The notes under the pieces were generated by a model, which was given only the letters and a program-made list of their open reading frames with translations, was not told the origin of the DNA and did not search any database. From positions 434,001-498,000 of the IMG/VR virus record IMGVR_UViG_3300046517_002304: a stretch of 64,000 nt of DNA; one strand, 5' to 3'. Shown here piece by piece: positions 2,149 to 46,466 of this stretch; the first letter of the stretch is position 1, and every line of letters begins with the position of its first letter. Position numbers and translations under genes: made by a program.

Positions 2149-2771
2149 AAAATAGTTTTTTGAATTTGTTTTAAGCCGACATTTGTTTCATAGTTGGAAT
2201 ATATCCAAGCTGGAATAATAGGATACTCCAAAAACGTATCTGGGTCAATATCTAAATTTCTTTCACCATCTAACCGATTTTGCTCATAAAAAATTGATTG
2301 GAAATTTTTGGGCAAAAGATTGACCGCTACGAGCGTTCGTACATAACCATATTCCCAAGGATATTCTATACAAAAACCCTCAAGGCGATCTACGCGGTCA
2401 ATCATCAAATCCCAATTCGCCTGGTTATAGAAAAAAACTTCTAGCGCGCCAGATGAATTTTTGTCAAAAGTCAATCCAAGTCCACGAGGAACAACGTGTG
2501 GGATAAATGCCTTGCTGTGACCATAATAACAATGATGCTCATGTCCTCTAGACGGGCAATCTTTGTGAACTCCCATTAGATAAGAATTAACATGCCGTCT
2601 CGGGAGATTCCTTAAAGTCCCAAACACTGCCATAGGAAATGGGAAGGCGTATCTCTGGCTTACAGGCGCAGCCAGAAAGCGATCATACAACTTCCAAAGA
2701 CCTTTGAGTTTAGGCGACAACCAACGCTCCCTTTTCTTCATTGTCGTCGTCGGATGATTCGTAAACAGCAA
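2133..2771 (-). CDS. gamma-glutamylcyclotransferase (AIG2-like) family protein
   Basis: AVFGTLR motif, LEVFFY, VDRLEG, YVRTLV; true start may be the ATG at 2741. Confidence 0.7.
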   Translation of the reverse strand: MLFTNHPTTTMKKRERWLSPKLKGLWKLYDRFLAAPVSQRYAFPFPMAVFGTLRNLPRRHVNSYLMGVHKDCPSRGHEHHCYYGHSKAFIPHVVPRGLGLTFDKNSSGALEVFFYNQANWDLMIDRVDRLEGFCIEYPWEYGYVRTLVAVNLLPKNFQSIFYEQNRLDGERNLDIDPDTFLEYPIIPAWIYSNYETNVGLKQIQKTILWDRS

Positions 2772-3051
2772 TCACGTCTTCAACTGGAATAAGGAACCGA
2801 TTCTCGCCGTCTTCATACGATGCAGGCATAGATCTAGCTAAACTACAAATAGCCTTTGAATACTTTCTAATGTTTACGTAATCAAAATCATGTTCTACCT
2901 GAGGCGAAACAGCAAGAATTCTACAATTTCTAGTAGGAATTTTAGCGGTATCGGGTAATGCAATTCCACCTTTTGTCATACCTGAATCGGCCTCTTTAAG
3001 CACCAATACTCTCGGGCCGGACGGAACAATAGAAGTTAATTCTTTTTTCAT
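2710..3051 (-). CDS. groES: co-chaperonin GroES-like
   Basis: IVPSGPRVLV...TKGGIALPDTAK...ILAVSP and C-terminal LIPVEDVIAV. Confidence 0.8.
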   Translation of the reverse strand: MKKELTSIVPSGPRVLVLKEADSGMTKGGIALPDTAKIPTRNCRILAVSPQVEHDFDYVNIRKYSKAICSLARSMPASYEDGENRFLIPVEDVIAVYESSDDDNEEKGALVVA

Positions 3052-3056
3052 AGTTT

Positions 3057-3290
3057 TTATCCAAAGGTAAGAGTGGTAATTATATTGTCTTCGTCAAGAC
3101 CAACATTTAATCTACTTGACACAAAGTCACATGTATAAACTGATCCTGGCTTAAGCACCCGCACTTTAGTAGCTTCTTTAATTACGGTTTTAATTCCTTC
3201 TCGCGTAATATCGTTTTCCTCTAAAGGAATCTCTACAAGTCTTCTGCCTAGTAAAACACTAGCCCCTTTTATTGATTGGCTGCTGCTCAT
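3057..3290 (-). CDS. I78-family serine protease inhibitor-like protein
   Basis: RVLKPGSVYTCDFVSSRLNVGLDEDNIITTLTFG pattern. Confidence 0.7.
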   Translation of the reverse strand: MSSSQSIKGASVLLGRRLVEIPLEENDITREGIKTVIKEATKVRVLKPGSVYTCDFVSSRLNVGLDEDNIITTLTFG

Positions 3291-14343: not shown

Positions 14344-14372
14344 CTGCTCATTCCACTCAATAACCTATTTTT

Positions 14373-14519
14373 TTATAGACTCTGCTGGCATACATTGATA
14401 GCAGGGAGATAAGCGAACGAAAAAGTGCTGCAAAACAAGTTGTTTTTAGGGCAATTTGCGTAGAAAATCTTCCAATTTACCTGTGTTTGTGAAGCATCAC
14501 CGTGTTTACAATTAATCAT
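14373..14519 (-). CDS. 48-aa Cys-containing peptide
   Basis: Below the ORF-track cutoff; AGGAG 7 nt before ATG; MINCKHGDASQTQVNWKIFYANCPKNNLFCSTFSFAYLPAINVCQQSL. Confidence 0.5.
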   Translation of the reverse strand: MINCKHGDASQTQVNWKIFYANCPKNNLFCSTFSFAYLPAINVCQQSL

Positions 14520-14610
14520 TTTAAGTCTCCTGAGCTGACATCAATATATATTCACTTTATCTAGGTAAATTTTAAAACGTCAAAACAGCCGCCTTATATC
14601 ACATATATCG

Positions 14611-25147: not shown

Positions 25148-28100
25148 TCAAGAACAGTCAGAAACCGCAAAAAATTGGGCCGTAACATCAGTCAAGGTAT
25201 TGCAATTTACGCTTTGCGTTTTGGTAAAATCACTAAGAAAAACAGGGTTGCTGTACATTTTTACGCTTGCGATGTTCGTTATTATACCAGCTTTTTTCAA
25301 CTTTGAACAGACCTCTTCCAAAGAACGCGCCGGAATTGTCATGACTTGACGAGACAAGCAGGATGCAGTGCTGTCACTAAGCGGAGGGCATGTTTGAGTA
25401 GAACAATTTGTTTCCACAGTATAAAACATCATTGACCCTTGCCCAATGCTCCATGACAAAACAAGCGTCGTAGAAAGATTGGCGTTCACATTCCAGCTTA
25501 TTGGAAGACTGATAACATACGTAACTTGTCCGCCGGTAGATCCGCCACCGAATATTAGGCCGCCGGTTCCAGTATATGAATGTGATAAAACAATACAATC
25601 GGCTTGTCCACCGAAGATAAGACCGCCAGTACCAAAATATATCCTTGTCTCAACATCAGCATCAGCGCTACCACTAAATATCAATCCGCCTGTTCCGATG
25701 TAAGAAAGTTGGAAGCTGGCATCACTACTACCACTAAATATCAATCCGCCAGATGTGTTGATCCACGTAAGAATATGGTTCACTATTCCTGTACCGCCCA
25801 GCATAAGACCGCCAGAGCCGTCTACAACAAAGTTAGGAATATAATACCCTGATGGGAAAGACGCATGATAATCAAATGCAATTTCATCGGGATCTGAATA
25901 ATCACTATAAACTATGACTTCATCAATTAAATTATTAAACCGATTTCCGCTGCCTGTTGACGGACCATCAATATACCTTGTGCCATTATTCTTAGCACCA
26001 ATACTAATCGCATCGTGCGACCCAACATTATCTGCAAGACCGCCATGAATGCCAAATAAAACGCCGTTCAAATACCCGGCGATAACATGTCCGGCAGCGT
26101 GGAACGATAATGCAGCATGATATCTTTGATGTGATTGTAAAATTGGGGAACTAAAGACATAGTGGAATCCCCAAGCCGGACTGCCGGAATCAGCCGTCAT
26201 GTTCCAAACAATCATGACAATTACATAAGAATCTAAATATATCCCAAACCCGCGAGTAATATCACCTTCTTCATAAAGAGTTCGGCGAGTAACAACATCG
26301 GCGCCGGTCCTAAACCAAAGTTCGATAGTTCTCTGAGTATATGGAGTACTGCTATTTATCGCGACATTATCCGGCGATAAAAGATAACTACTAGTTCCAC
26401 CAAACAGAACAGAAGCATTACTAGGATCAGACAAAATTAAACTTGTCTGATTTAAAGTAAAGTCACCATGGTAAGTCCCATTCATCGCAGAACCAAGCGA
26501 GCCTGAGTTTACCGCAGTTGTCCCAGATGGATCGTCCAACCTATACCACACTAACGGATTTCTTGACGTAATAGCATTAGCAAATGACGGAAACGTGTTA
26601 AAGAATATCCCGCCAGATGGATAAAAATTCATTACGGGATAAGAATGAGCGCTGCCCCCAAAATTTAAACCACCACTGCCAAAAAATGGCGTAATAACAA
26701 ATCCGTTTGCGCCTATAAATGAATTGGCTCTTATGGCACACGTAGCAATGTGATTTACCATCGGCATCGCACCAATACTGGCTACACAAAGTAATGGAGC
26801 TGCGGCAGGACCATAAACAAAACTAAAATTTATCGGTTTGCTAGTTCTATTTATTAAATTAGGATATGACGCCAAGCTATTTGTATAGCTGGCAAGTACC
26901 GTGTTCGCTGGTAAAGCACGATTATAAATCCTAACATCATCTAAGTACCCTGTAACAAATGATGTGATCTGGTTATAAGATCCGATAACCAAAGGTTGCC
27001 CGGAGTCAGATCCATGTGTACCAGTCCCGTCTGTCGCCCCGGAATAAGATACTTCCACACCATTATAATAAACATGAATATTAGATGCTGCGCTTCCCCC
27101 GCGCCATGTAACCACAACATGAGTCCAAGATCCAAACGGTGGAGGTGCACAACTTCTGGTGCAGTCTGTTCCATTAAATACAACAGCAACAAGTAGAGAC
27201 GGAATGTTTACTTGGATGTATAGACCAGCGCTAGCGTTATTGTCGGTCTTATAAATAACCGTACCACTAGAAACTCCCATTATCCAAAAACTAACAGTAA
27301 ATGGCCCAGTACCGATTAATTCATTGGGTGGACCAACTGCCCCCTGTGATGCTCCTCCGAAAAATAAAATGCTACCAAAGCCACCCTTGCGGGATGTGGG
27401 GCGATACCCCCCAAGAAAACGTTGTTGCAGATTTGCAAATAATGCATGATGCTTGCCGACTATATCATACCAATATAAGCCTTGGCTGGTTACCGGCGAT
27501 GCCAAATACCACGCAGTCAGCCCCTGCGCTAACGGATGTTTAAAGTTAACTTGTCTGGCAAAGTTAGTGTTGTTAATCGTAATAGGAAAAGTGCGACTGG
27601 CGTTTTGCGCAAACCCGGCTCTTTGTAGAGTATTGCCGCCTTCTACATGATCTACTCTTGCATTTAAAATAGCAGATGAACTATTGGCTACTCTGCATAT
27701 CTGGCCCTCAATTATTACACAATCGCCTCTGCATACAATATGAGTAGTTGCTATATGGGCCACTCTGGCGTTGGGCGTAGCGATATTAGAGACAACCGTT
27801 AAGTGAGCAGTGCCAACACGTTGACCGGGACTGAATGCTATAATTGTGGAATTACATATTACGGCACAGGCGCTCTTAATAGTATTCTTGGCCCGGGGAT
27901 TTAGGCTAACGCTATTTAATACTACACATGTTGCTACGTGAGCCACTTTAGATCCAGCAGTGCCAATACTTGACGAACAAATAATAGATGTATTGTTGTT
28001 AGATGCTACGTGTCCGCTAGCCCCAATGAATGAATTACAAACTATCGTCCAATTACCGGGGGCAACTATAGTATTAAAATTTATATATTTATTAGCCCTA

Positions 28101-30085
28101 TTGATAAGTCCAGGGTATGATGTAATGCTATTCTGGTAAAGTAAGTTGGTTTCGCCACGAGATAGTTCTCGGTTATAGATCCTAATGTCGTCCATATAAC
28201 CAGTTAAATTCTGAGTTGACTGGTTATACGAACCTATAACTAACGGAGATCCAGCATCAGTTAATCGCGTTCCGTTTCCATCAGATGTAGTTTGATATGC
28301 TTGTTCTACACCATTATAATAAATGTGAATGCCAGAAGCTAAACTAGACCCATTCCATGTTAAAGTTATATGTACCCAAGCATTAACTGGAGGTACTGGA
28401 GAAGACCTGATACAATCATTGTTTTGAAAAGTAATATTCAGCGCAAGTCCGCCGCTATTATAATCTATAAACCATCCCGATTGAACATCATTATCTGTTT
28501 TATACAAAAGAGTTGTGGCGGTTGATATTGAAATATACGTCCAAAAACTAACCGTGAACGCACCGGTACCAGTTAAAGCAGTTCTAGGGCCAAGTATATA
28601 AGATGTTCTGCTGCCCGTAAAATGAAAACTACCAAAACCACCTCTGTGACTAAGGACATTAAATCCATCGCCTTGGGCAGCAAACATATTTGTCAACACA
28701 CCATTATTACTGCGCGTAGTCAAATCATATACTATGGTAGATCGACTCTTCTGCGGTAGAGCCATATACCACAAAACTAATCCCTTAGACAAACAATTAC
28801 CGCTATTAACCGGATAGCTAAAATTAATATTATTAGAATCAGTCGGAAAACTCTTTCTATACTTTTGAACAAACCCAGCATTTTGCGTAACTATTCTAAG
28901 TCCAGAAAAATGAGACACCCTACAATTAGGTGTAGATATACTGGAATTACAAATAACAGCGACGGAATCAATGTGGGCTACTTTAGCGCTAGCCCCAATG
29001 TTACTATTACATTTTACTGCACAAGTCGCAACATGTGTAACTCTACAATTAGGCGTCGTAATGCTAGAGCTACACTTAACATCACAAATACCAAAAACAA
29101 AGTTTTGTAATGCAAAGTAAGGTATAAGAGAAGGCTGAGAATAAAGTTCGTCAGGGTACCGCCAAAGTTCAAAAACCTGTCCTGCCGTAAAAGGTTCGGC
29201 GTAAAGACGGAAGTCACGTATCGGTCCTACGAAGTCATGGCTTGCACTAGCTCCGCTAGTGGCAACCTGCCCACCGATGGTAATAGCCTGATTAGCACAA
29301 GATAATACTCCAGCAGCGTTTGCGCTGCTGGAGTTACTCGTAGCAATTAATTGTCCATTAATATAAAAAGACTGAGGTCGTGGTGATGGAAATCCTGTAA
29401 ACTTACTTACAACACAAGCATGTATCCATTCGCCAGGATTATCATCAATCCTAATAACAAAGTCATTACCGGCATAAATGTTATCGATCCAGTGTAATTC
29501 ACGAGTATGAGGATCGTACCAGAGGTACCATCCTTGAATTGTCGCTGGCCCACTATCATGAGGAACATGATTGCCAACAATAACATAGGTAAAACCAATA
29601 GAAGCTTGGTCCGGCGGTATCATAAACCAAATTGACATTGTCCAGCCGACTGATTCTGAATTTACAATTTGCGGAATAGAGCACTGGGTAGGTACAGTAA
29701 TATAATTACTGACGGCGGTCATATTAAACACCATACCGAAATATGTGTCATATATCCACTGACCAGTTAGATGACCTGTCAACGAGCCGTTAAAGTGGTT
29801 TGGTCCTACGTCCCTAACTGGCCAGCCGCCGGAAGTGCTGGTCCCGTTGGAATCTCCAGAACCATCGTTCAACGGCATGGCCAACACAAGTGTTGGCGTG
29901 AACTGTGAACTACCTTCGTTAATGCCAGGACACCAGCGTCCTCCCCACTCTACGTTTGTAATACAAGGACGAACATCGGGGACTGAGCCAGAGAACGACT
30001 GGATAGAAACTAGCTGACCGTCCGTACTGGCCGTGAAAGTAGGATTAATAGTAGAAAATGTGGGCAAAGTACGGACTAGGGCCAT
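25148..30085 (-). CDS. large LamG/concanavalin-A multi-domain virion protein (fibre/adhesin-like)
   Basis: 1645 aa with four LamG-like blocks (IRDFRLY, MDDIRIYNR, LDDVRIYNR, IDEVIVY) and C-terminal GGLxFxG repeats; TAAATA 4 nt before ATG. Confidence 0.8.
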   Translation of the reverse strand: MALVRTLPTFSTINPTFTASTDGQLVSIQSFSGSVPDVRPCITNVEWGGRWCPGINEGSSQFTPTLVLAMPLNDGSGDSNGTSTSGGWPVRDVGPNHFNGSLTGHLTGQWIYDTYFGMVFNMTAVSNYITVPTQCSIPQIVNSESVGWTMSIWFMIPPDQASIGFTYVIVGNHVPHDSGPATIQGWYLWYDPHTRELHWIDNIYAGNDFVIRIDDNPGEWIHACVVSKFTGFPSPRPQSFYINGQLIATSNSSSANAAGVLSCANQAITIGGQVATSGASASHDFVGPIRDFRLYAEPFTAGQVFELWRYPDELYSQPSLIPYFALQNFVFGICDVKCSSSITTPNCRVTHVATCAVKCNSNIGASAKVAHIDSVAVICNSSISTPNCRVSHFSGLRIVTQNAGFVQKYRKSFPTDSNNINFSYPVNSGNCLSKGLVLWYMALPQKSRSTIVYDLTTRSNNGVLTNMFAAQGDGFNVLSHRGGFGSFHFTGSRTSYILGPRTALTGTGAFTVSFWTYISISTATTLLYKTDNDVQSGWFIDYNSGGLALNITFQNNDCIRSSPVPPVNAWVHITLTWNGSSLASGIHIYYNGVEQAYQTTSDGNGTRLTDAGSPLVIGSYNQSTQNLTGYMDDIRIYNRELSRGETNLLYQNSITSYPGLINRANKYINFNTIVAPGNWTIVCNSFIGASGHVASNNNTSIICSSSIGTAGSKVAHVATCVVLNSVSLNPRAKNTIKSACAVICNSTIIAFSPGQRVGTAHLTVVSNIATPNARVAHIATTHIVCRGDCVIIEGQICRVANSSSAILNARVDHVEGGNTLQRAGFAQNASRTFPITINNTNFARQVNFKHPLAQGLTAWYLASPVTSQGLYWYDIVGKHHALFANLQQRFLGGYRPTSRKGGFGSILFFGGASQGAVGPPNELIGTGPFTVSFWIMGVSSGTVIYKTDNNASAGLYIQVNIPSLLVAVVFNGTDCTRSCAPPPFGSWTHVVVTWRGGSAASNIHVYYNGVEVSYSGATDGTGTHGSDSGQPLVIGSYNQITSFVTGYLDDVRIYNRALPANTVLASYTNSLASYPNLINRTSKPINFSFVYGPAAAPLLCVASIGAMPMVNHIATCAIRANSFIGANGFVITPFFGSGGLNFGGSAHSYPVMNFYPSGGIFFNTFPSFANAITSRNPLVWYRLDDPSGTTAVNSGSLGSAMNGTYHGDFTLNQTSLILSDPSNASVLFGGTSSYLLSPDNVAINSSTPYTQRTIELWFRTGADVVTRRTLYEEGDITRGFGIYLDSYVIVMIVWNMTADSGSPAWGFHYVFSSPILQSHQRYHAALSFHAAGHVIAGYLNGVLFGIHGGLADNVGSHDAISIGAKNNGTRYIDGPSTGSGNRFNNLIDEVIVYSDYSDPDEIAFDYHASFPSGYYIPNFVVDGSGGLMLGGTGIVNHILTWINTSGGLIFSGSSDASFQLSYIGTGGLIFSGSADADVETRIYFGTGGLIFGGQADCIVLSHSYTGTGGLIFGGGSTGGQVTYVISLPISWNVNANLSTTLVLSWSIGQGSMMFYTVETNCSTQTCPPLSDSTASCLSRQVMTIPARSLEEVCSKLKKAGIITNIASVKMYSNPVFLSDFTKTQSVNCNTLTDVTAQFFAVSDCS
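25668..25750. repeat. 23-bp direct repeat x2 (CTACCACTAAATATCAATCCGCC), 60-nt period
   Basis: Copies at 25668-25690 and 25728-25750 encode the GGLIFSGS peptide repeat. Confidence 0.85.
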
Positions 30086-30113
30086 ATATTATTTAGAGAA
30101 TCTCAACTATATT

Positions 30114-30965
30114 ATGGGCATGCCGCCAGATATAGCTCCAATAAGAAATAAAACAGCAAAAGATAAACCATGGGAAGGCAATATAAGTAAGAAACCATGG
30201 GATTATCAGGTGAGCGCCACGATAGCAGTATTAGACGCTGTAGAGCCACTAAAACTCGCCGTCCAGTTACTACAACTACAAACAATCAAGCCTTATATCA
30301 TTTTAGTAGATACTGGGAGTACGCCAGAAAACTACAAGGAAATAGAACAACTAAGATCTGAAAACATAGAAGTCCATTCTTTAAAACTAAATGCAGTAGA
30401 GCACCCCTCAGACTTTGTGGCGATGGCATGTGATTTAGCCGGGTCGGTATGTAGAACAAAGTATATGCTATGGACACATGCCGATTGTTTCTTAACACGA
30501 AGAGATGTAATAGAAGAATTACTTGAATTATGCGACACAGAAAATCCGGTTGTCGGCTACCGATTATCGCCTAGAGCACACGACAACTGGAAAGATATGT
30601 TCGGCCATACGCTGACTATGACTGAAATGAGCAAGTACTTAGAATACAGAATAATGTGGAATTTAAAACAATTCTGTAATTTTTATGGCTTCCCAAATCA
30701 CAAGCCAGATGAATCGCGGCCCAATTTACCAGACACAGAATATTTTGCTAATTTAATATACCAAGACTGTGGGGTTAAAGCCACACTAATCGGCGACGAA
30801 GAAAACTTCAAGAGAAATATAACAGATCATTTTGACCATTGTAGATCTTTTGCATCAGGCATGCTGTACGCGCCGGAATACTATAAAATATGCCAAACAT
30901 GGATGAATGATGCCATGAAAGATGCGAGAGCTAGAATTAAAGAGTGGGGAAAAGATGGATTGTAG
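30114..30965 (+). CDS. GT2-like glycosyltransferase
   Basis: IILVDTGS, WTHADCFL; start moved to ATG 30114 to avoid overlapping the divergent gene. Confidence 0.7.
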   Translation: MGMPPDIAPIRNKTAKDKPWEGNISKKPWDYQVSATIAVLDAVEPLKLAVQLLQLQTIKPYIILVDTGSTPENYKEIEQLRSENIEVHSLKLNAVEHPSDFVAMACDLAGSVCRTKYMLWTHADCFLTRRDVIEELLELCDTENPVVGYRLSPRAHDNWKDMFGHTLTMTEMSKYLEYRIMWNLKQFCNFYGFPNHKPDESRPNLPDTEYFANLIYQDCGVKATLIGDEENFKRNITDHFDHCRSFASGMLYAPEYYKICQTWMNDAMKDARARIKEWGKDGL

Positions 30966-30981
30966 AATGTTTTAGTATATT

Positions 30982-31665
30982 CTACATCTCTAATCTTGTT
31001 AATATTCTACTGATAATTTCATGACGAACAATATCTTCTGGTCCAAGTCTGATAACGCTTATTAAATCTAGGCCCTCTAATTTAGATGCCAATGATTCTA
31101 AAGCGCCCTGTTTAAATTTAGGAAGATCAGACTGGACCGTGTCTCCAGTAATCACCATCTTAGAACCCTCGCCGAACCGAGTTAACAACATTTTAATCTG
31201 TTCAAGTGTAGCATTCTGGCATTCATCCGCGATAATAAATGCATTTTTAAATGTACGACCACGCATATAATTAAGAGGCAATATTTCAATCTGCTCTATT
31301 TCAGAAACATCACGCCTTGACGAGTTTTTAATTTCATCAAATAATGGGTGCATATAAGGCTCTATTTTTTCCAGGGCTGACCCAGGAAGATATCCGAGAC
31401 TTCCGCCGGCTTCAACAACTGGCCTTGTCAATATAATTTTATCAACAAACTTATTGTGAAGATGCTCGGCGGCCGTCGCGGCTGCAATAAAAGTTTTGCC
31501 GGTTCCAGCACCACCAAGAACAAATGTAATTAAATTAGCGTTAATAGCATCAATTAATAAAGCTTGATTTTTAGTCCTAGGAATTAATTTTCTAGGAGGC
31601 AAAGGCTGATTTTCAGGTTTCCCTTTCCCCGACGACGCTTTTGCACGTTTGCGATTTGCCATCAA
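30982..31665 (-). CDS. phoH: PhoH-like ATPase
   Basis: GGAGTGKT, LGYLPG, YMRGRTF, ADECQN, LTRFGEGSKMVITGD. Confidence 0.95.
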   Translation of the reverse strand: MMANRKRAKASSGKGKPENQPLPPRKLIPRTKNQALLIDAINANLITFVLGGAGTGKTFIAAATAAEHLHNKFVDKIILTRPVVEAGGSLGYLPGSALEKIEPYMHPLFDEIKNSSRRDVSEIEQIEILPLNYMRGRTFKNAFIIADECQNATLEQIKMLLTRFGEGSKMVITGDTVQSDLPKFKQGALESLASKLEGLDLISVIRLGPEDIVRHEIISRILTRLEM

Positions 31666-31692
31666 GTATATTTATCGTTATCAATATCAAAA

Positions 31693-31722
31693 AAAAATAG
31701 CCGTCATTTGACGGCTATTTTT
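31693..31722. terminator. intrinsic terminator
   Basis: AAAAATAGCCGTCA-TT-TGACGGCTATTTTT, with a longer T-run on the minus strand. Confidence 0.9.
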
Positions 31723-31968
31723 AGCGAAAGACTTCGTAAACTTAAGCCGTTAGGCTTGCGGAAGAGAAGAATCACATAATATTGGATTCCTAGAATGAAA
31801 TAAAACTTTGCGAAGATTTAACCTGTGATGAATCAAATCTAGTTTTAGATCATTCCGAAAGGCAATAAAGCATACGCTAAAAACAATTTAATCAAAATCC
31901 TACCGCAACTATCTTGCTCTTTAACGTAAGCAAACTTCCCAACAACAACGATTGGTCTCGCTTATTAA
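31693..31968 (-). ncRNA. candidate structured non-coding RNA (~275 nt), rod-like fold, possibly 6S-like
   Basis: Own promoter and terminator; ATG-initiated frames are at most 7 codons; 5' and 3' ends are complementary. Confidence 0.55.
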
Positions 31969-31974
31969 TTGTGT

Positions 31975-32002
31975 ATTTTACCAGAAAAATCAATAATGTC
32001 AA
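31975..32002 (-). promoter_or_regulatory. strong sigma70-type promoter TTGACA-N16-TAAAAT with extended -10 TG
   Basis: Consensus -35 overlaps the upstream stop codon; points into the ORF-less region. Confidence 0.75.
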
Positions 32003-32754
32003 GACGACTTTACCAAAGACGATATCTCTGGCATTTTACGCATCTGAGCAGGAATTTCTAGTGCGGCTTGCTCAGCAAATCTTTCATACAAAGAAACATC
32101 TAGTCCCGAAATATGATAATGATGAACAATGGATGCTTTCACGGCACGCGGCTTATACCCCTTACCCGTCGCAGAAAGAGTGAATAAGAAAGATGCTCCA
32201 ATGTGTGGTAGCGCTTCATTGAACGGCCCAACCTCGTCCCAGCACTTCCTGGTGACCATCAGGCACCAATCCTGCAAATAGTCAATCTTCTGATCCTGCA
32301 TTACATAATGATGCATCTGTGTTCCTACAATACCAGAATCCGATGAATCAGATACGCCAATCAATAAATCAAGCCAAGCAGGATTGAGAACGCTAGTATC
32401 GGCATGCATAAAAACTAAATACGCCGAATTCTTATCCGCTGCTTTTGCGCCTTGATTAGCAGCTTTGGTCCAGTAAAGGTTCTTCTCATTTCTGATTATC
32501 TTAATTCTACCATCATCTAATGTATCAAGGTAATCCTTAGAATCTTTGCTGGTTGACCCATTATCTACGACAATAATTTCATAATTATTATTCACGCTAC
32601 AAATAGAAATCGTTTGTAGGCACACACTAAGATACTCAGGCTTATCATTATGAACTACGATAATAGAAACTTGCTCGTCGGTTGCATCGCCAGTTAAATC
32701 AATTACTAAATCAGGTCTAGCACCTTCAAGTGGGTTATGTGGTTTATTTGCCAT
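31999..32754 (-). CDS. GT2 glycosyltransferase
   Basis: VSIIVV, IIVVDNGS, NQGA, FMHADT. Confidence 0.9.
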   Translation of the reverse strand: MANKPHNPLEGARPDLVIDLTGDATDEQVSIIVVHNDKPEYLSVCLQTISICSVNNNYEIIVVDNGSTSKDSKDYLDTLDDGRIKIIRNEKNLYWTKAANQGAKAADKNSAYLVFMHADTSVLNPAWLDLLIGVSDSSDSGIVGTQMHHYVMQDQKIDYLQDWCLMVTRKCWDEVGPFNEALPHIGASFLFTLSATGKGYKPRAVKASIVHHYHISGLDVSLYERFAEQAALEIPAQMRKMPEISSLVKSS

Positions 32755-45586: not shown

Positions 45587-46084
45587 TTAATTCCTTGCTT
45601 TTGCAGGGGAACCAATTTTGTCAATTGTAATTCCAAAACTATGATCAATCTCATGGGCATAAACAGCCGCAAAATCTGAGACTACCATATCAACATCTTT
45701 CAACACAATTTCATTTTTAGCAATAATTTGCTTACCAATCACTCGGATGCTTTTATGACGAGAAACGACGTAAAACTTCAAGTTACCACTGGCATCTTTC
45801 AAAGATAAACATCCTTCATAAGATTCATACACTTCTTCGCCCACTGGCTCGTACCTACAGTTTACCCAATGCGAAAAGCCATGTAAATAGTTTTCTGAAG
45901 AAAGACTGTTTTTTATCACAAAAAGATTAAGCGGAATGCCAACTTGTGTTGCGGATAATCCAACGCCCTGCTCTTTTACGCACAAAACACTTAGCGCTGT
46001 AGCCAGCTTAAAAGCATCAACCAACTTGGTTTCATCAACAGCTTCAGCTAACGGAATTTTATCAGGAGCAACCAGCTTATACAT
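45587..46084 (-). CDS. def: peptide deformylase
   Basis: GVGLSATQVG, EGCLS, HEIDH all present. Confidence 0.9.
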   Translation of the reverse strand: MYKLVAPDKIPLAEAVDETKLVDAFKLATALSVLCVKEQGVGLSATQVGIPLNLFVIKNSLSSENYLHGFSHWVNCRYEPVGEEVYESYEGCLSLKDASGNLKFYVVSRHKSIRVIGKQIIAKNEIVLKDVDMVVSDFAAVYAHEIDHSFGITIDKIGSPAKARN

Positions 46085-46466
46085 TTTTGCTTCCTAACTT
46101 GCCAACAATCTTGTCTACTCGCTCTTTAAACCAAGTGGTTAAAGCAGCAACATTCATTCCCTTTGGGATATTCAAGATCACAGTATGCATTTTATCATTT
46201 GGCAAAACTTTGTCAAGTAGATTTGCCAAAAATAATTCAATAGCAACACCTTCTTTTTCAGCCGCAACCTTCAACTTCTGAATAACTGCATCGGCTAAAA
46301 CCAATCCGTTATTCACAGCCGGGGGCAATCCGTCCATTCCACTACTGCCAACAGCCCAATTCTCCATAATGGTTTTAGCCATCACAGATGCAGGAACTGC
46401 TTCGCCAGCCTGTGCTTTAATAGCATCAAATACTGAATCCTCTACTTTAAACCTTAACTCTTTCAT
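46077..46466 (-). CDS. possible ribbon-helix-helix DNA-binding protein
   Basis: LRFKVEDSVFDAIKAQA and LVLADAVIQKLKVAAEKEG repeats. Confidence 0.4.
   Translation of the reverse strand: MKELRFKVEDSVFDAIKAQAGEAVPASVMAKTIMENWAVGSSGMDGLPPAVNNGLVLADAVIQKLKVAAEKEGVAIELFLANLLDKVLPNDKMHTVILNIPKGMNVAALTTWFKERVDKIVGKLGSKNV

What the first reader, a model, noticed from the sequence alone, without database searches (positions are those of the whole stretch)
31693..32002. ORF-less transcription unit folding as a 6S-RNA-like rod
Seen: a consensus promoter (TTGACA-N16-TAAAAT, extended -10) and a strong terminator enclose about 275 nt with no ATG frame above 7 codons, in an otherwise gap-free genome. By-eye pairing gives a closing stem (AGCGA-GAC at 31962-31955 with GTC-TT-TCGCT at 31732-31723, extended by TCGT/ACGA). 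Next is an open central region with small hairpins on both strands (TTGCTT/GAGCAA; AAGCC-TAAC-GGCTT). A second long-range stem (TTGCGG-T-AG 31908-31900 with CT-T-CCGCAA 31764-31756) and an apical hairpin (GAAT-GATCTA/TAGATT-TG-ATTC) follow. Known: 6S RNA has this stem-bubble-stem layout and sequesters sigma70 holoenzyme. Inference: a phage-made RNAP decoy shutting down sigma70 transcription in favour of phage sigma/late promoters, or a new ncRNA class.
Basis: partly seen in the sequence, partly recalled or inferred. Interest (0 to 1): 0.8.

Follow-up and report, generated by a model that had tools for sequence, protein, structure and literature searches.

The report
Structured phage RNA gene beside phoH
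A 511-kb phage has a real RNA gene with its own promoter and terminator and no protein, just upstream of phoH; related phages keep it with compensating base-pair changes, but its branched fold is not 6S-like, so it is an uncatalogued small RNA of unknown role.

Summary
The observation largely holds. On the minus strand, the best sigma70-type promoter of the region (TTGACA-16-TAAAAT with TG, 32002-31975) and a 13-bp/U9 terminator (31722-31693) enclose about 280 nt. The longest ATG frame is 7 codons, and every frame has TAA stops. The unit lies between a GT2 glycosyltransferase gene and phoH in a 511-kb phage contig.

It is conserved. Two related Logan contigs (L087, L136) carry a gap of similar size directly upstream of phoH. 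An ENA contig (L085) holds the 3' part. A JGI contig has a 345-nt gap but no retrievable DNA. L087 and L136 share a multi-stem fold with 26 compensatory pairs.

The window copy shares:
- the closing stem, with a different sequence;
- the junction motifs AUCGUUG and GCAAGCC-hairpin-RCGAA;
- the promoter and terminator positions.

Its interior is not recognised by a covariance model (5 bits).

The 6S reading is not supported. No Rfam 6S hit appears even at E<=10. The family fold is branched.

No antiterminator is predicted, and no tandem repeats were found. Best reading: a stand-alone protein-binding RNA, possibly partnered with PhoH. Function is inferred, not shown.

The parts
31997..32002 (-). 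-35 hexamer TTGACA; overlaps the TGA stop codon of the upstream glycosyltransferase gene
   Evidence: The same hexamer sits at the same place in L087.
31975..31983 (-). Extended -10 element, TGG-TAAAAT. The transcription start is predicted at about 31970-31967.
   Evidence: L087 has TGC-TAAAAT. The start site is inferred from spacing, not measured.
31955..31962 (-). P1 5' strand (AGCGAGAC) of the closing stem
   Evidence: Pair probabilities 0.62-0.99. P1 is kept with different sequence in L087 and L136.
31946..31952 (-). Conserved AUCGUUG. UCGU (31951-31948) is the P2 5' strand. UUG begins P3.
   Evidence: Identical heptamer at the same relative place in L087 and L136. P2 probability 0.80-0.94.
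31792..31856 (-). Long interior hairpin (GGAAUGA...UCAUUCU) of about 24 bp.
   Evidence: Probability 0.85-1.00 at its base. Present in both the MFE and centroid structures.
31767..31791 (-). Second interior hairpin (AGGAAUC...GAUUCUU)
   Evidence: MFE and centroid structures. No comparative support.
31744..31759 (-). Conserved GCAAGCC (31759-31753) followed by the 3' hairpin AAGCC-UAAC-GGCUU (31757-31744). This is P9 of the family.
   Evidence: The GCC/GGC hairpin is invariant in L087 and L136 and present in L085.
31723..31737 (-). ACGA (31737-31734, P2 3' strand; part of the RCGAA motif) and GUCUUUCGCU (31732-31723, P1 3' strand)
31685..31722 (-). Intrinsic terminator: 13-bp stem, 4-nt loop, U-run
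   Evidence: The hairpin forms with P about 0.97 and has no upstream competitor. Equivalent terminators exist in L087, L136 and L085.
30982..31662 (-). phoH (226 aa, PhoH domain only, no PIN). The gene lies directly downstream.
   Evidence: Pfam PF02562, E 2e-68. phoH follows the RNA in every locus found.
31999..32754 (-). GT2 glycosyltransferase gene directly upstream. This is context only, not part of the unit.
   Evidence: Pfam PF00535. 79% identical in L087. It is replaced by an unrelated 148-aa ORF in L136.

Best explanation
This is a separately transcribed gene for a structured non-coding RNA. It is about 245 nt plus a terminator hairpin, roughly 280 nt in all. It belongs to a small uncatalogued RNA family that sits directly upstream of phoH in a narrow clade of huge phages.

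Shown:
- a consensus sigma70-type promoter and an intrinsic terminator;
- no coding capacity;
- conservation of the unit in relatives;
- a closing stem (P1-P2) that pairs the two ends of the RNA and leads into a sequence-conserved three-way junction (AUCGUUG on the 5' side, GCAAGCC-hairpin-RCGAA on the 3' side);
- distal arms that vary in sequence and length, and that keep their pairing between L087 and L136.

Inferred: host RNA polymerase makes the RNA in quantity, probably early in infection, and the paired ends plus the terminator hairpin make it stable. It acts in trans as a protein-binding RNA, with the conserved junction as the binding platform and the variable arms as lineage-specific modules. 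The most plausible partner is the product of the adjacent gene, PhoH. PhoH is an SF1-helicase-like ATPase whose relatives act on RNA. The RNA would then be its cofactor, regulator or substrate.

My confidence that it is a real structured ncRNA gene is about 0.8. My confidence that PhoH is the partner is about 0.25-0.3.
For: - Promoter, terminator and absence of ORFs.
- The same phage in three further samples has an identical element.
- L087 has GT at 79% and PhoH at 52% identity. Its gap is 338 nt. It has the same TTGACA-16-TAAAAT+TG promoter and a 14-bp terminator at the same positions.
- L136 has a 357-nt gap upstream of phoH although the upstream gene is different.
- L085 holds the 3' part plus a terminator.
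- A JGI contig with GT at 86% identity has a 345-nt gap.
- A model built from L087 alone finds L136 at E 1.2e-12.
- Between L087 and L136, 93.5% of cells are paired and 26 pairs changed on both sides. Shuffles give 13.5 +/- 2.6 and slid controls give 2-4.
- P1 and the 3' hairpin are also recovered on a structure-blind MAFFT alignment.
- The fold holds 12 and 5 G-U pairs, so it is specific to the promoter strand.
- Folding z-scores are -3.45, -3.77 and -2.20.
- The 3' junction motif occurs only in these elements in 923 kb of both strands.
- PhoH as an RNA-related ATPase in jumbo phages: PMC7824862.
- Structured ncRNAs next to PhoH2 genes, with lineage-specific architectures: preprint 10.64898/2026.10.21.760802.
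- The phoH link persists when the upstream neighbour changes.
Against: - The window copy is not recognised as a whole by models built from L087 and L136. It scores 5 bits, below chance hits, and only P1, P2, the start of P3 and the 3' hairpin align.
- Its global sequence similarity to them is marginal: z 1.85 and 2.04.
- Its interior fold has no comparative support, because the one close relative has no retrievable DNA.
- Only three full copies and one partial copy exist, and the covariation counts were made on a model-fitted alignment.
- The phoH link may be inherited synteny, and most loci were found through phoH, which is an ascertainment bias.
- Many related PhoH genes have no such gap. 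A 595-kb relative, LR756511.1, has GT and phoH but no element. PhoH therefore does not need this RNA.
- There is no expression data.
Confidence: 0.4

Rival explanations
1. A stand-alone trans-acting phage RNA whose target has nothing to do with PhoH. Examples are a base-pairing regulator of host or phage mRNAs, or a decoy or sponge for a host protein or defence system. Its place before phoH would be just an operon boundary that tolerates a promoter and a terminator.
For: - It has its own strong promoter and terminator.
- PhoH relatives commonly lack the RNA.
- In L085 another small unit separates the RNA from phoH.
Against: - There is no indication of any target.
- Its size and conserved multi-stem core are unlike typical seed-based sRNAs.
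- Every known copy lies directly upstream of phoH, even where the upstream neighbour differs.
Confidence: 0.27
2. A cis-acting 5' leader of phoH. The structured RNA would sense a ligand or protein and decide whether RNA polymerase reads through the terminator into phoH.
For: - The layout is promoter - structured RNA - terminator - phoH, 23-40 nt later.
- The window copy has no convincing promoter between the terminator and the ATG.
- The RNA always precedes phoH.
Against: - No alternative pairing competes with the terminator in any of the three copies. P(terminator) is about 0.97, pairing to upstream sequence is at most 0.02, and the hairpin persists when P1 is forced open.
- No known riboswitch or leader family matches.
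- L087 has a TGaTATAAT extended -10 right after the terminator.
- L085 has a TTGACA promoter-like site after it. phoH therefore seems to have its own promoter there.
- The RNA has no excess complementarity to the phoH start region.
Confidence: 0.12
3. A 6S-RNA-like decoy that mimics an open promoter and sequesters host sigma70 holoenzyme.
For: - Closing stem formed by the paired 5' and 3' ends.
- High-expression signals.
- A phage would profit from shutting down host transcription.
- 6S RNAs are diverse in sequence.
Against: - No 6S model matches the window copy, L087 or L136, even at E<=10.
- The family fold is branched and its branches are supported by compensatory changes.
- The interior between the closing stem and the long hairpin is about 144 nt with sub-hairpins, not a bubble of about 30 nt.
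- The body is 240-270 nt, against about 180-200 nt for 6S RNA (own knowledge; 180 nt in PMC8545117).
- The conserved nucleotides sit in a three-way junction next to the closing stem, not in a central bubble.
Confidence: 0.05
4. Non-functional spacer or decayed gene that happens to keep a promoter and a terminator.
For: The sequence of the window copy's interior is poorly conserved.
Against: - Gap size, promoter, terminator and junction motifs are retained across lineages whose PhoH is only 52% identical.
- 26 compensatory pairs separate L087 and L136.
- The genome is otherwise tightly packed.
Confidence: 0.05
5. A small protein or recoded gene.
For: Non-ATG frames of 23-36 codons exist.
Against: - All six frames in all three copies hold several TAA stops.
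- The longest ATG frame is 7 codons.
- No frame is conserved, and nhmmer sees no similarity between copies.
- The neighbouring genes read normally in the standard code.
Confidence: 0.02

Closest known systems
PhoH2-associated structured ncRNAs (COMPASS cluster 1,412,455 and sister clusters; preprint 10.64898/2026.10.21.760802)
   Same: - A long (there 357-nt) multi-stem RNA without Rfam annotation lies directly beside a PhoH-family gene.
- Different PhoH lineages carry different RNA architectures.
- The function is untested.
   Different: - Those RNAs are bacterial (Bacteroidota-enriched) and lie beside PIN-PhoH fusion proteins.
- Here the gene is a phage PhoH of 226 aa with no PIN domain.
- Homology could not be tested because no sequences are available to the tools.
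- Most relatives of this phage PhoH lack the RNA.
6S RNA (Rfam RF00013 and related models)
   Same: - Abundant-looking stand-alone RNA.
- The 5' and 3' ends pair in a closing stem.
- The promoter is sigma70-type.
   Different: - No model match.
- Branched rather than rod-shaped.
- Longer than 6S.
- The conserved core is a three-way junction, not a central bubble.
Type III toxin-antitoxin loci (ToxIN layout; own knowledge)
   Same: The gene order is promoter - RNA - intrinsic terminator - protein gene. That order makes RNA in excess over its protein partner.
   Different: - The RNA is not a tandem repeat array.
- The protein is an ATPase, not an endoribonuclease.
- phoH may have its own promoter in L087 and L085.
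Y RNA with Ro/Rsr (own knowledge)
   Same: - The ends pair in a stem that carries the conserved protein-binding site.
- The distal part is variable.
- The RNA gene lies next to the gene of its protein partner.
   Different: - No match to the YrlA/Y RNA models in Rfam.
- No rsr gene here.
- This RNA is larger.
Transcription-attenuating riboswitches and leaders
   Same: Promoter, structured RNA closed by a P1 helix, terminator, then the gene.
   Different: - No antiterminator is predicted.
- No known aptamer matches.

Membership tests
6S RNA | Match to the Rfam 6S covariance models | tested here: not met
   No hit at gathering score in the 64-kb window. No 6S hit at E<=10 in the window element, L087 or L136.
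6S RNA | Unbranched rod: closing stem, large central bubble, terminal stem | tested here: not met
The family fold has 2 branch points and arms P5/6, P7/8 and P9, which are kept by compensatory changes.
6S RNA | Length of about 180-200 nt | tested here: not met
   The bodies are 242, 238 and 271 nt without the terminator.
6S RNA | Binds sigma70 holoenzyme and templates product RNAs | not testable with these tools
   Needs biochemistry.
PhoH-family-associated structured ncRNA (preprint 10.64898/2026.10.21.760802) | Lies directly beside a PhoH-family gene | tested here: met
   The RNA ends 23-40 nt before the phoH ATG in the window, L087 and L136 and about 115 nt before it in L085.
PhoH-family-associated structured ncRNA (preprint 10.64898/2026.10.21.760802) | The partner protein is PhoH2 (PIN + PhoH) | tested here: not met
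   Only the PhoH domain is present, residues 27-223 of 227.
PhoH-family-associated structured ncRNA (preprint 10.64898/2026.10.21.760802) | Conserved multi-stem fold with covariation | tested here: met
   Met between L087 and L136. For the window copy only P1, P2 and P9 are shared.
PhoH-family-associated structured ncRNA (preprint 10.64898/2026.10.21.760802) | Sequence or structure homology to a published cluster | not testable with these tools
   The cluster sequences are not held by the tools.
Riboswitch / attenuator leader | Mutually exclusive terminator and antiterminator | tested here: not met
   The terminator 5' arm pairs downstream with P about 0.97 and upstream with P at most 0.02. 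The hairpin stays when P1 is forced open.
Riboswitch / attenuator leader | Known aptamer or leader class | tested here: not met
   Only terminator-like sub-threshold hits.
Riboswitch / attenuator leader | No promoter between the element and the regulated gene | tested here: inconclusive
   None is convincing in the window. L087 has TGaTATAAT and L085 has TTGACA-16-GATATT.
Type III antitoxin RNA | Tandem direct repeats processed by the toxin | tested here: not met
   No repeat families in the window element. Only trivial 11-23-nt pairs in L087 and L136.
tRNA / tmRNA | Recognised by ARAGORN or Rfam | tested here: not met
   0 genes in the window. No Rfam hit.

The most novel reading that the evidence does not exclude
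The RNA is a dedicated partner of phage PhoH: a cofactor, specificity module or regulator. PhoH is one of the most widespread phage 'auxiliary' genes and still has no known function. A natural RNA ligand encoded next to it, in the same way as bacterial PhoH2 genes carry lineage-specific RNAs, would show that the PhoH family works as RNA-protein machines. It would also give the first direct assay for phage PhoH.
Probability: 0.25. Interest if true: 0.85.

Novelty: new variant of a known kind. Interest (0 to 1): 0.6.

Why it matters
Huge phages are known for their proteins, tRNAs and CRISPR arrays. Very few of their stand-alone structured RNAs have been described. This one is a clean case: it has its own consensus promoter and terminator, it cannot encode a protein, and it is conserved with compensatory changes. 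It matches none of the 4227 Rfam families.

It lies directly upstream of phoH in every copy found. A 2026 preprint independently reports structured RNAs beside bacterial PhoH2 genes. Together these make a concrete, cheap experiment possible on the long-open question of what phage PhoH does. If there is no link with PhoH, it is still a new phage RNA family, with a defined conserved junction to probe.

Tried and rejected
- **Rfam.** Searched at gathering score and at E<=10 on the window, L087 and L136. Only terminator-like sub-threshold hits appeared. ARAGORN found nothing.
- **GenBank phages.** No DNA match. The best GT relative, LR756511.1, lacks the element.
- **nhmmer between copies.** No similarity, even between the window and L087.
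- **MAFFT.** It misaligned the 5' ends. I therefore built a model from L087 alone, then from L087 and L136. These join L087 and L136 firmly but do not recover the window copy: 5 bits.
- **GT relatives.** 47 metagenome loci with GT relatives at 25-67% identity, most of them about 50-60%, hold no element. The 314-nt 'gap' in L088 reads as an open frame.
- **PhoH relatives.** P0005, P0007 and P0241-P0244 have no gap.
- **IMG/VR motif scan.** None passed the full signature.
- **Upstream-gap statistic.** I computed whether phoH genes in general have long ORF-free upstream regions. I reject it as unreliable, because many of those gaps hold a ~150-aa ORF that my crude gene caller dropped.
- **Other negative results.** Antiterminator search, complementarity to the phoH start region and tandem repeats.
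- **Missing DNA.** The closest relative, a JGI 3300047160 contig with GT at 86% identity, could not be fetched.

Full report
**Where the window comes from.** The window is part of IMGVR_UViG_3300046517_002304, a 511,233-bp phage contig. Almost all genes run on the minus strand and are tightly packed. The finding lies between a GT2 glycosyltransferase gene (31999-32754, minus) and phoH (30982-31662, minus; PhoH domain only, E 2e-68). DnaJ, a TPP enzyme, an amidoligase and a 1645-aa Laminin_G_3 protein are nearby. No GenBank phage matches the DNA. The closest annotated relative of the GT is the 595-kb uncultured phage LR756511.1, at 54% identity.

**Check of the observation.**
- The promoter is real as a sequence feature: TTGACA, 16 nt, TAAAAT, with TG before the -10, at 32002-31975 on the minus strand. 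It scores 11 of 12 and is the best site in 3 kb.
- The -35 hexamer overlaps the GT stop codon.
- The terminator at 31722-31693 has 13 pairs, a 4-nt loop and a T-run.
- Between them there is no gene. The longest ATG frame is 7 codons. All six frames have several TAA stops, so stop-codon recoding cannot help.
- The closing stem is at exactly the coordinates given and is strongly predicted (0.62-0.99). UCGU/ACGA is 0.80-0.94.
- The AAGCC/GGCUU hairpin is plausible, at 0.47-0.71.
- The other three by-eye helices are not supported. UUGCUU/GAGCAA is 0.05-0.06. UUGCGG/CCGCAA is at most 0.06. The apical hairpin is 0.00 and is replaced by a longer hairpin at 31856-31792 with probability 0.85-1.00.
- The body without the terminator folds only modestly better than shuffles: z -2.20, 8/200. 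With the terminator z is -4.66.

**Relatives.**
- The same phage occurs in three further samples with an identical element.
- A Logan contig, L087, has the same gene order. Its GT is 79% and its PhoH 52% identical. Its gap between GT and phoH is 338 nt.
- The L087 gap opens with the same promoter call (TTGACA-16-TAAAAT with TG, the best in 2 kb) and closes with a 14-bp terminator.
- L136 has a PhoH 78% identical to that of L087. It has a 357-nt gap ending in a 14-bp terminator directly upstream of phoH, although the upstream gene is an unrelated 148-aa ORF.
- L085 has a PhoH 61% identical to the window's. It starts inside the element and holds its 3' part and a 19-bp terminator.
- A JGI contig with GT at 86% identity has a 345-nt gap, but its DNA could not be fetched.
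- More distant relatives lack the element. These are 47 metagenome loci with GT relatives at 25-67% identity (most about 50-60%), six further PhoH lineages and LR756511.1.

**Structure of the family.** L087 and L136 fold into the same architecture.
- P1 pairs the first 9 nt with the 9 nt just before the terminator.
- P2 (UCGU/GCGA) and P3 continue the rod.
- Two interior arms follow: P5 capped by P6, and a long P7 capped by P8.
- A small hairpin P9 (GCCA/UGGC) branches off between the 3' strands of P3 and P2.

A covariance model made from L087 alone finds L136 over its full length at E 1.2e-12. On that alignment 93.5% of cells are paired and 26 pairs changed on both sides. Shuffles give 13.5 +/- 2.6, and sliding the partners by 1-3 columns gives 2-4. 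This alignment is fitted to the model. However, RNAalifold on a structure-blind MAFFT alignment also recovers P1, with two compensatory pairs, and P9. The fold holds 12 and 5 G-U pairs, which would be mismatches on the other strand. The structure therefore belongs to the RNA made from the promoter strand. The bodies fold better than shuffles: z -3.45 and -3.77.

**How the window copy fits.**
- It shares P1 with a wholly different sequence (AGCGAGA/UUUCGCU against AGUUCAACA/UGUUGAGCU) and P2 (UCGU/ACGA).
- It shares the heptamer AUCGUUG 3-5 nt after P1, and the string GCAAGCC - hairpin - GGC - RCGAA just before the P1 3' strand.
- That 3' string occurs nowhere else in 923 kb of both strands of fetched DNA.
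- Its interior is not recognisably the same. Models built from L087, or from L087 and L136, give the whole element only 5 bits and treat the centre as an insertion.
- Global similarity is marginal: z 1.85 and 2.04.

I therefore regard it as a divergent member of the same family. The grounds are synteny, promoter and terminator position, and the junction core. Its interior fold remains unverified.

**What it is not.**
- It is not a known RNA. Nothing in the window reaches an Rfam gathering score, and only terminator-like sub-threshold hits appear in any of the three copies. There is no tRNA or tmRNA.
- It is not 6S-like by any feature I could test. There is no model match, the fold is branched, the body is 240-270 nt, and the conserved nucleotides sit in a three-way junction beside the closing stem rather than in a central bubble.
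- It is not a predicted riboswitch. The terminator forms with probability about 0.97 and has no competing upstream partner, even when P1 is forced open.
- L087 has a TGaTATAAT box and L085 a TTGACA site after the terminator, so phoH seems to have its own promoter there.
- There are no tandem repeats, so it is not a type III antitoxin array.
- It has no excess complementarity to the phoH start region.

**Most likely mechanism.** Shown: a separate transcription unit for a structured RNA with paired ends, a conserved junction and variable arms. Inferred: it is made by host sigma70 polymerase and is stable, and it acts in trans by binding a protein at the junction.

The only lead to a partner is position. 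Every copy lies directly upstream of phoH, also where the other neighbour differs. PhoH proteins are SF1-helicase-like ATPases. Relatives act on RNA (PMC7824862) or interact with the rRNA-maturation RNase YbeY (PMC5101352). A 2026 preprint reports lineage-specific structured RNAs beside bacterial PhoH2 genes (10.64898/2026.10.21.760802). The order promoter - RNA - terminator - protein gene is also the one type III toxin-antitoxin loci use to make RNA in excess over protein (own knowledge).

Against a strict partnership: most related PhoH genes have no such RNA, most of my loci were found through phoH, and only four lineages are known.

**Verdict.** The feature is real and conserved. The function is open. 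The PhoH link is a testable lead, not a result.

Noticed in passing
L085:166-275: A second mini-unit lies between the RNA's terminator and phoH. It has a TTGACA-16-GATATT promoter-like site (166-193) followed by a hairpin of about 55 nt with a U-run (about 201-255), just before the ATG at 276. It could be a short leader or a second small RNA.
   Followed up: partly
L087:5968-5990: The T-run plus TGaTATAAT right after the RNA terminator resembles the RNA's own promoter (74% over 23 nt). It is probably phoH's own extended -10 promoter, which re-uses the terminator's T-run.
   Followed up: partly
L120:1232-3119: The phoH similarity comes in two pieces (1346-1531 and 2765-3118) inside one 629-aa ORF. 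This suggests a large insertion in that PhoH, possibly an intein.
   Followed up: no
L087:9092-10300: A 402-aa ORF with NUMOD4 and HNH_3 domains, like a homing endonuclease, sits in the block that is otherwise syntenic with the window. The window has no counterpart.
   Followed up: no
window 25148-30085 (minus): A 1645-aa protein with four Laminin_G_3 (concanavalin-like lectin) repeats. Its counterpart in L087 is 2687 aa. It is probably a fibre or adhesin.
   Followed up: no
window, gene starts at 31662, 30085, 56788, 34784 and 39676 (minus): Many genes have a GGAG-type ribosome-binding site. These five, phoH included, instead have A/T-rich TAnAnT-like boxes 1-6 nt before the ATG. This may mean leaderless or SD-independent starts at the heads of operons.
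   Followed up: partly
window 46189-46216 (minus): This is the only other exact TTGACA-16-TAAAAT match in the 64 kb. It also has TG before the -10. It lies inside the ORF 46077-46466 and about 100 nt upstream of the gene that starts at 46084.
   Followed up: no
window 14344-14610 (minus): The other sizeable apparent gap holds a small ORF with a good ribosome-binding site (caGGAGacttaaaATG, from about 14518). It is therefore probably a short protein gene, not an RNA.
   Followed up: partly
window 30033-30965 (plus): A 310-aa ORF on the opposite strand (283 aa as called in public data) has a weak GT2 match. It is wedged between phoH and the 1645-aa gene and overlaps the latter's start by about 50 nt.
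   Followed up: no
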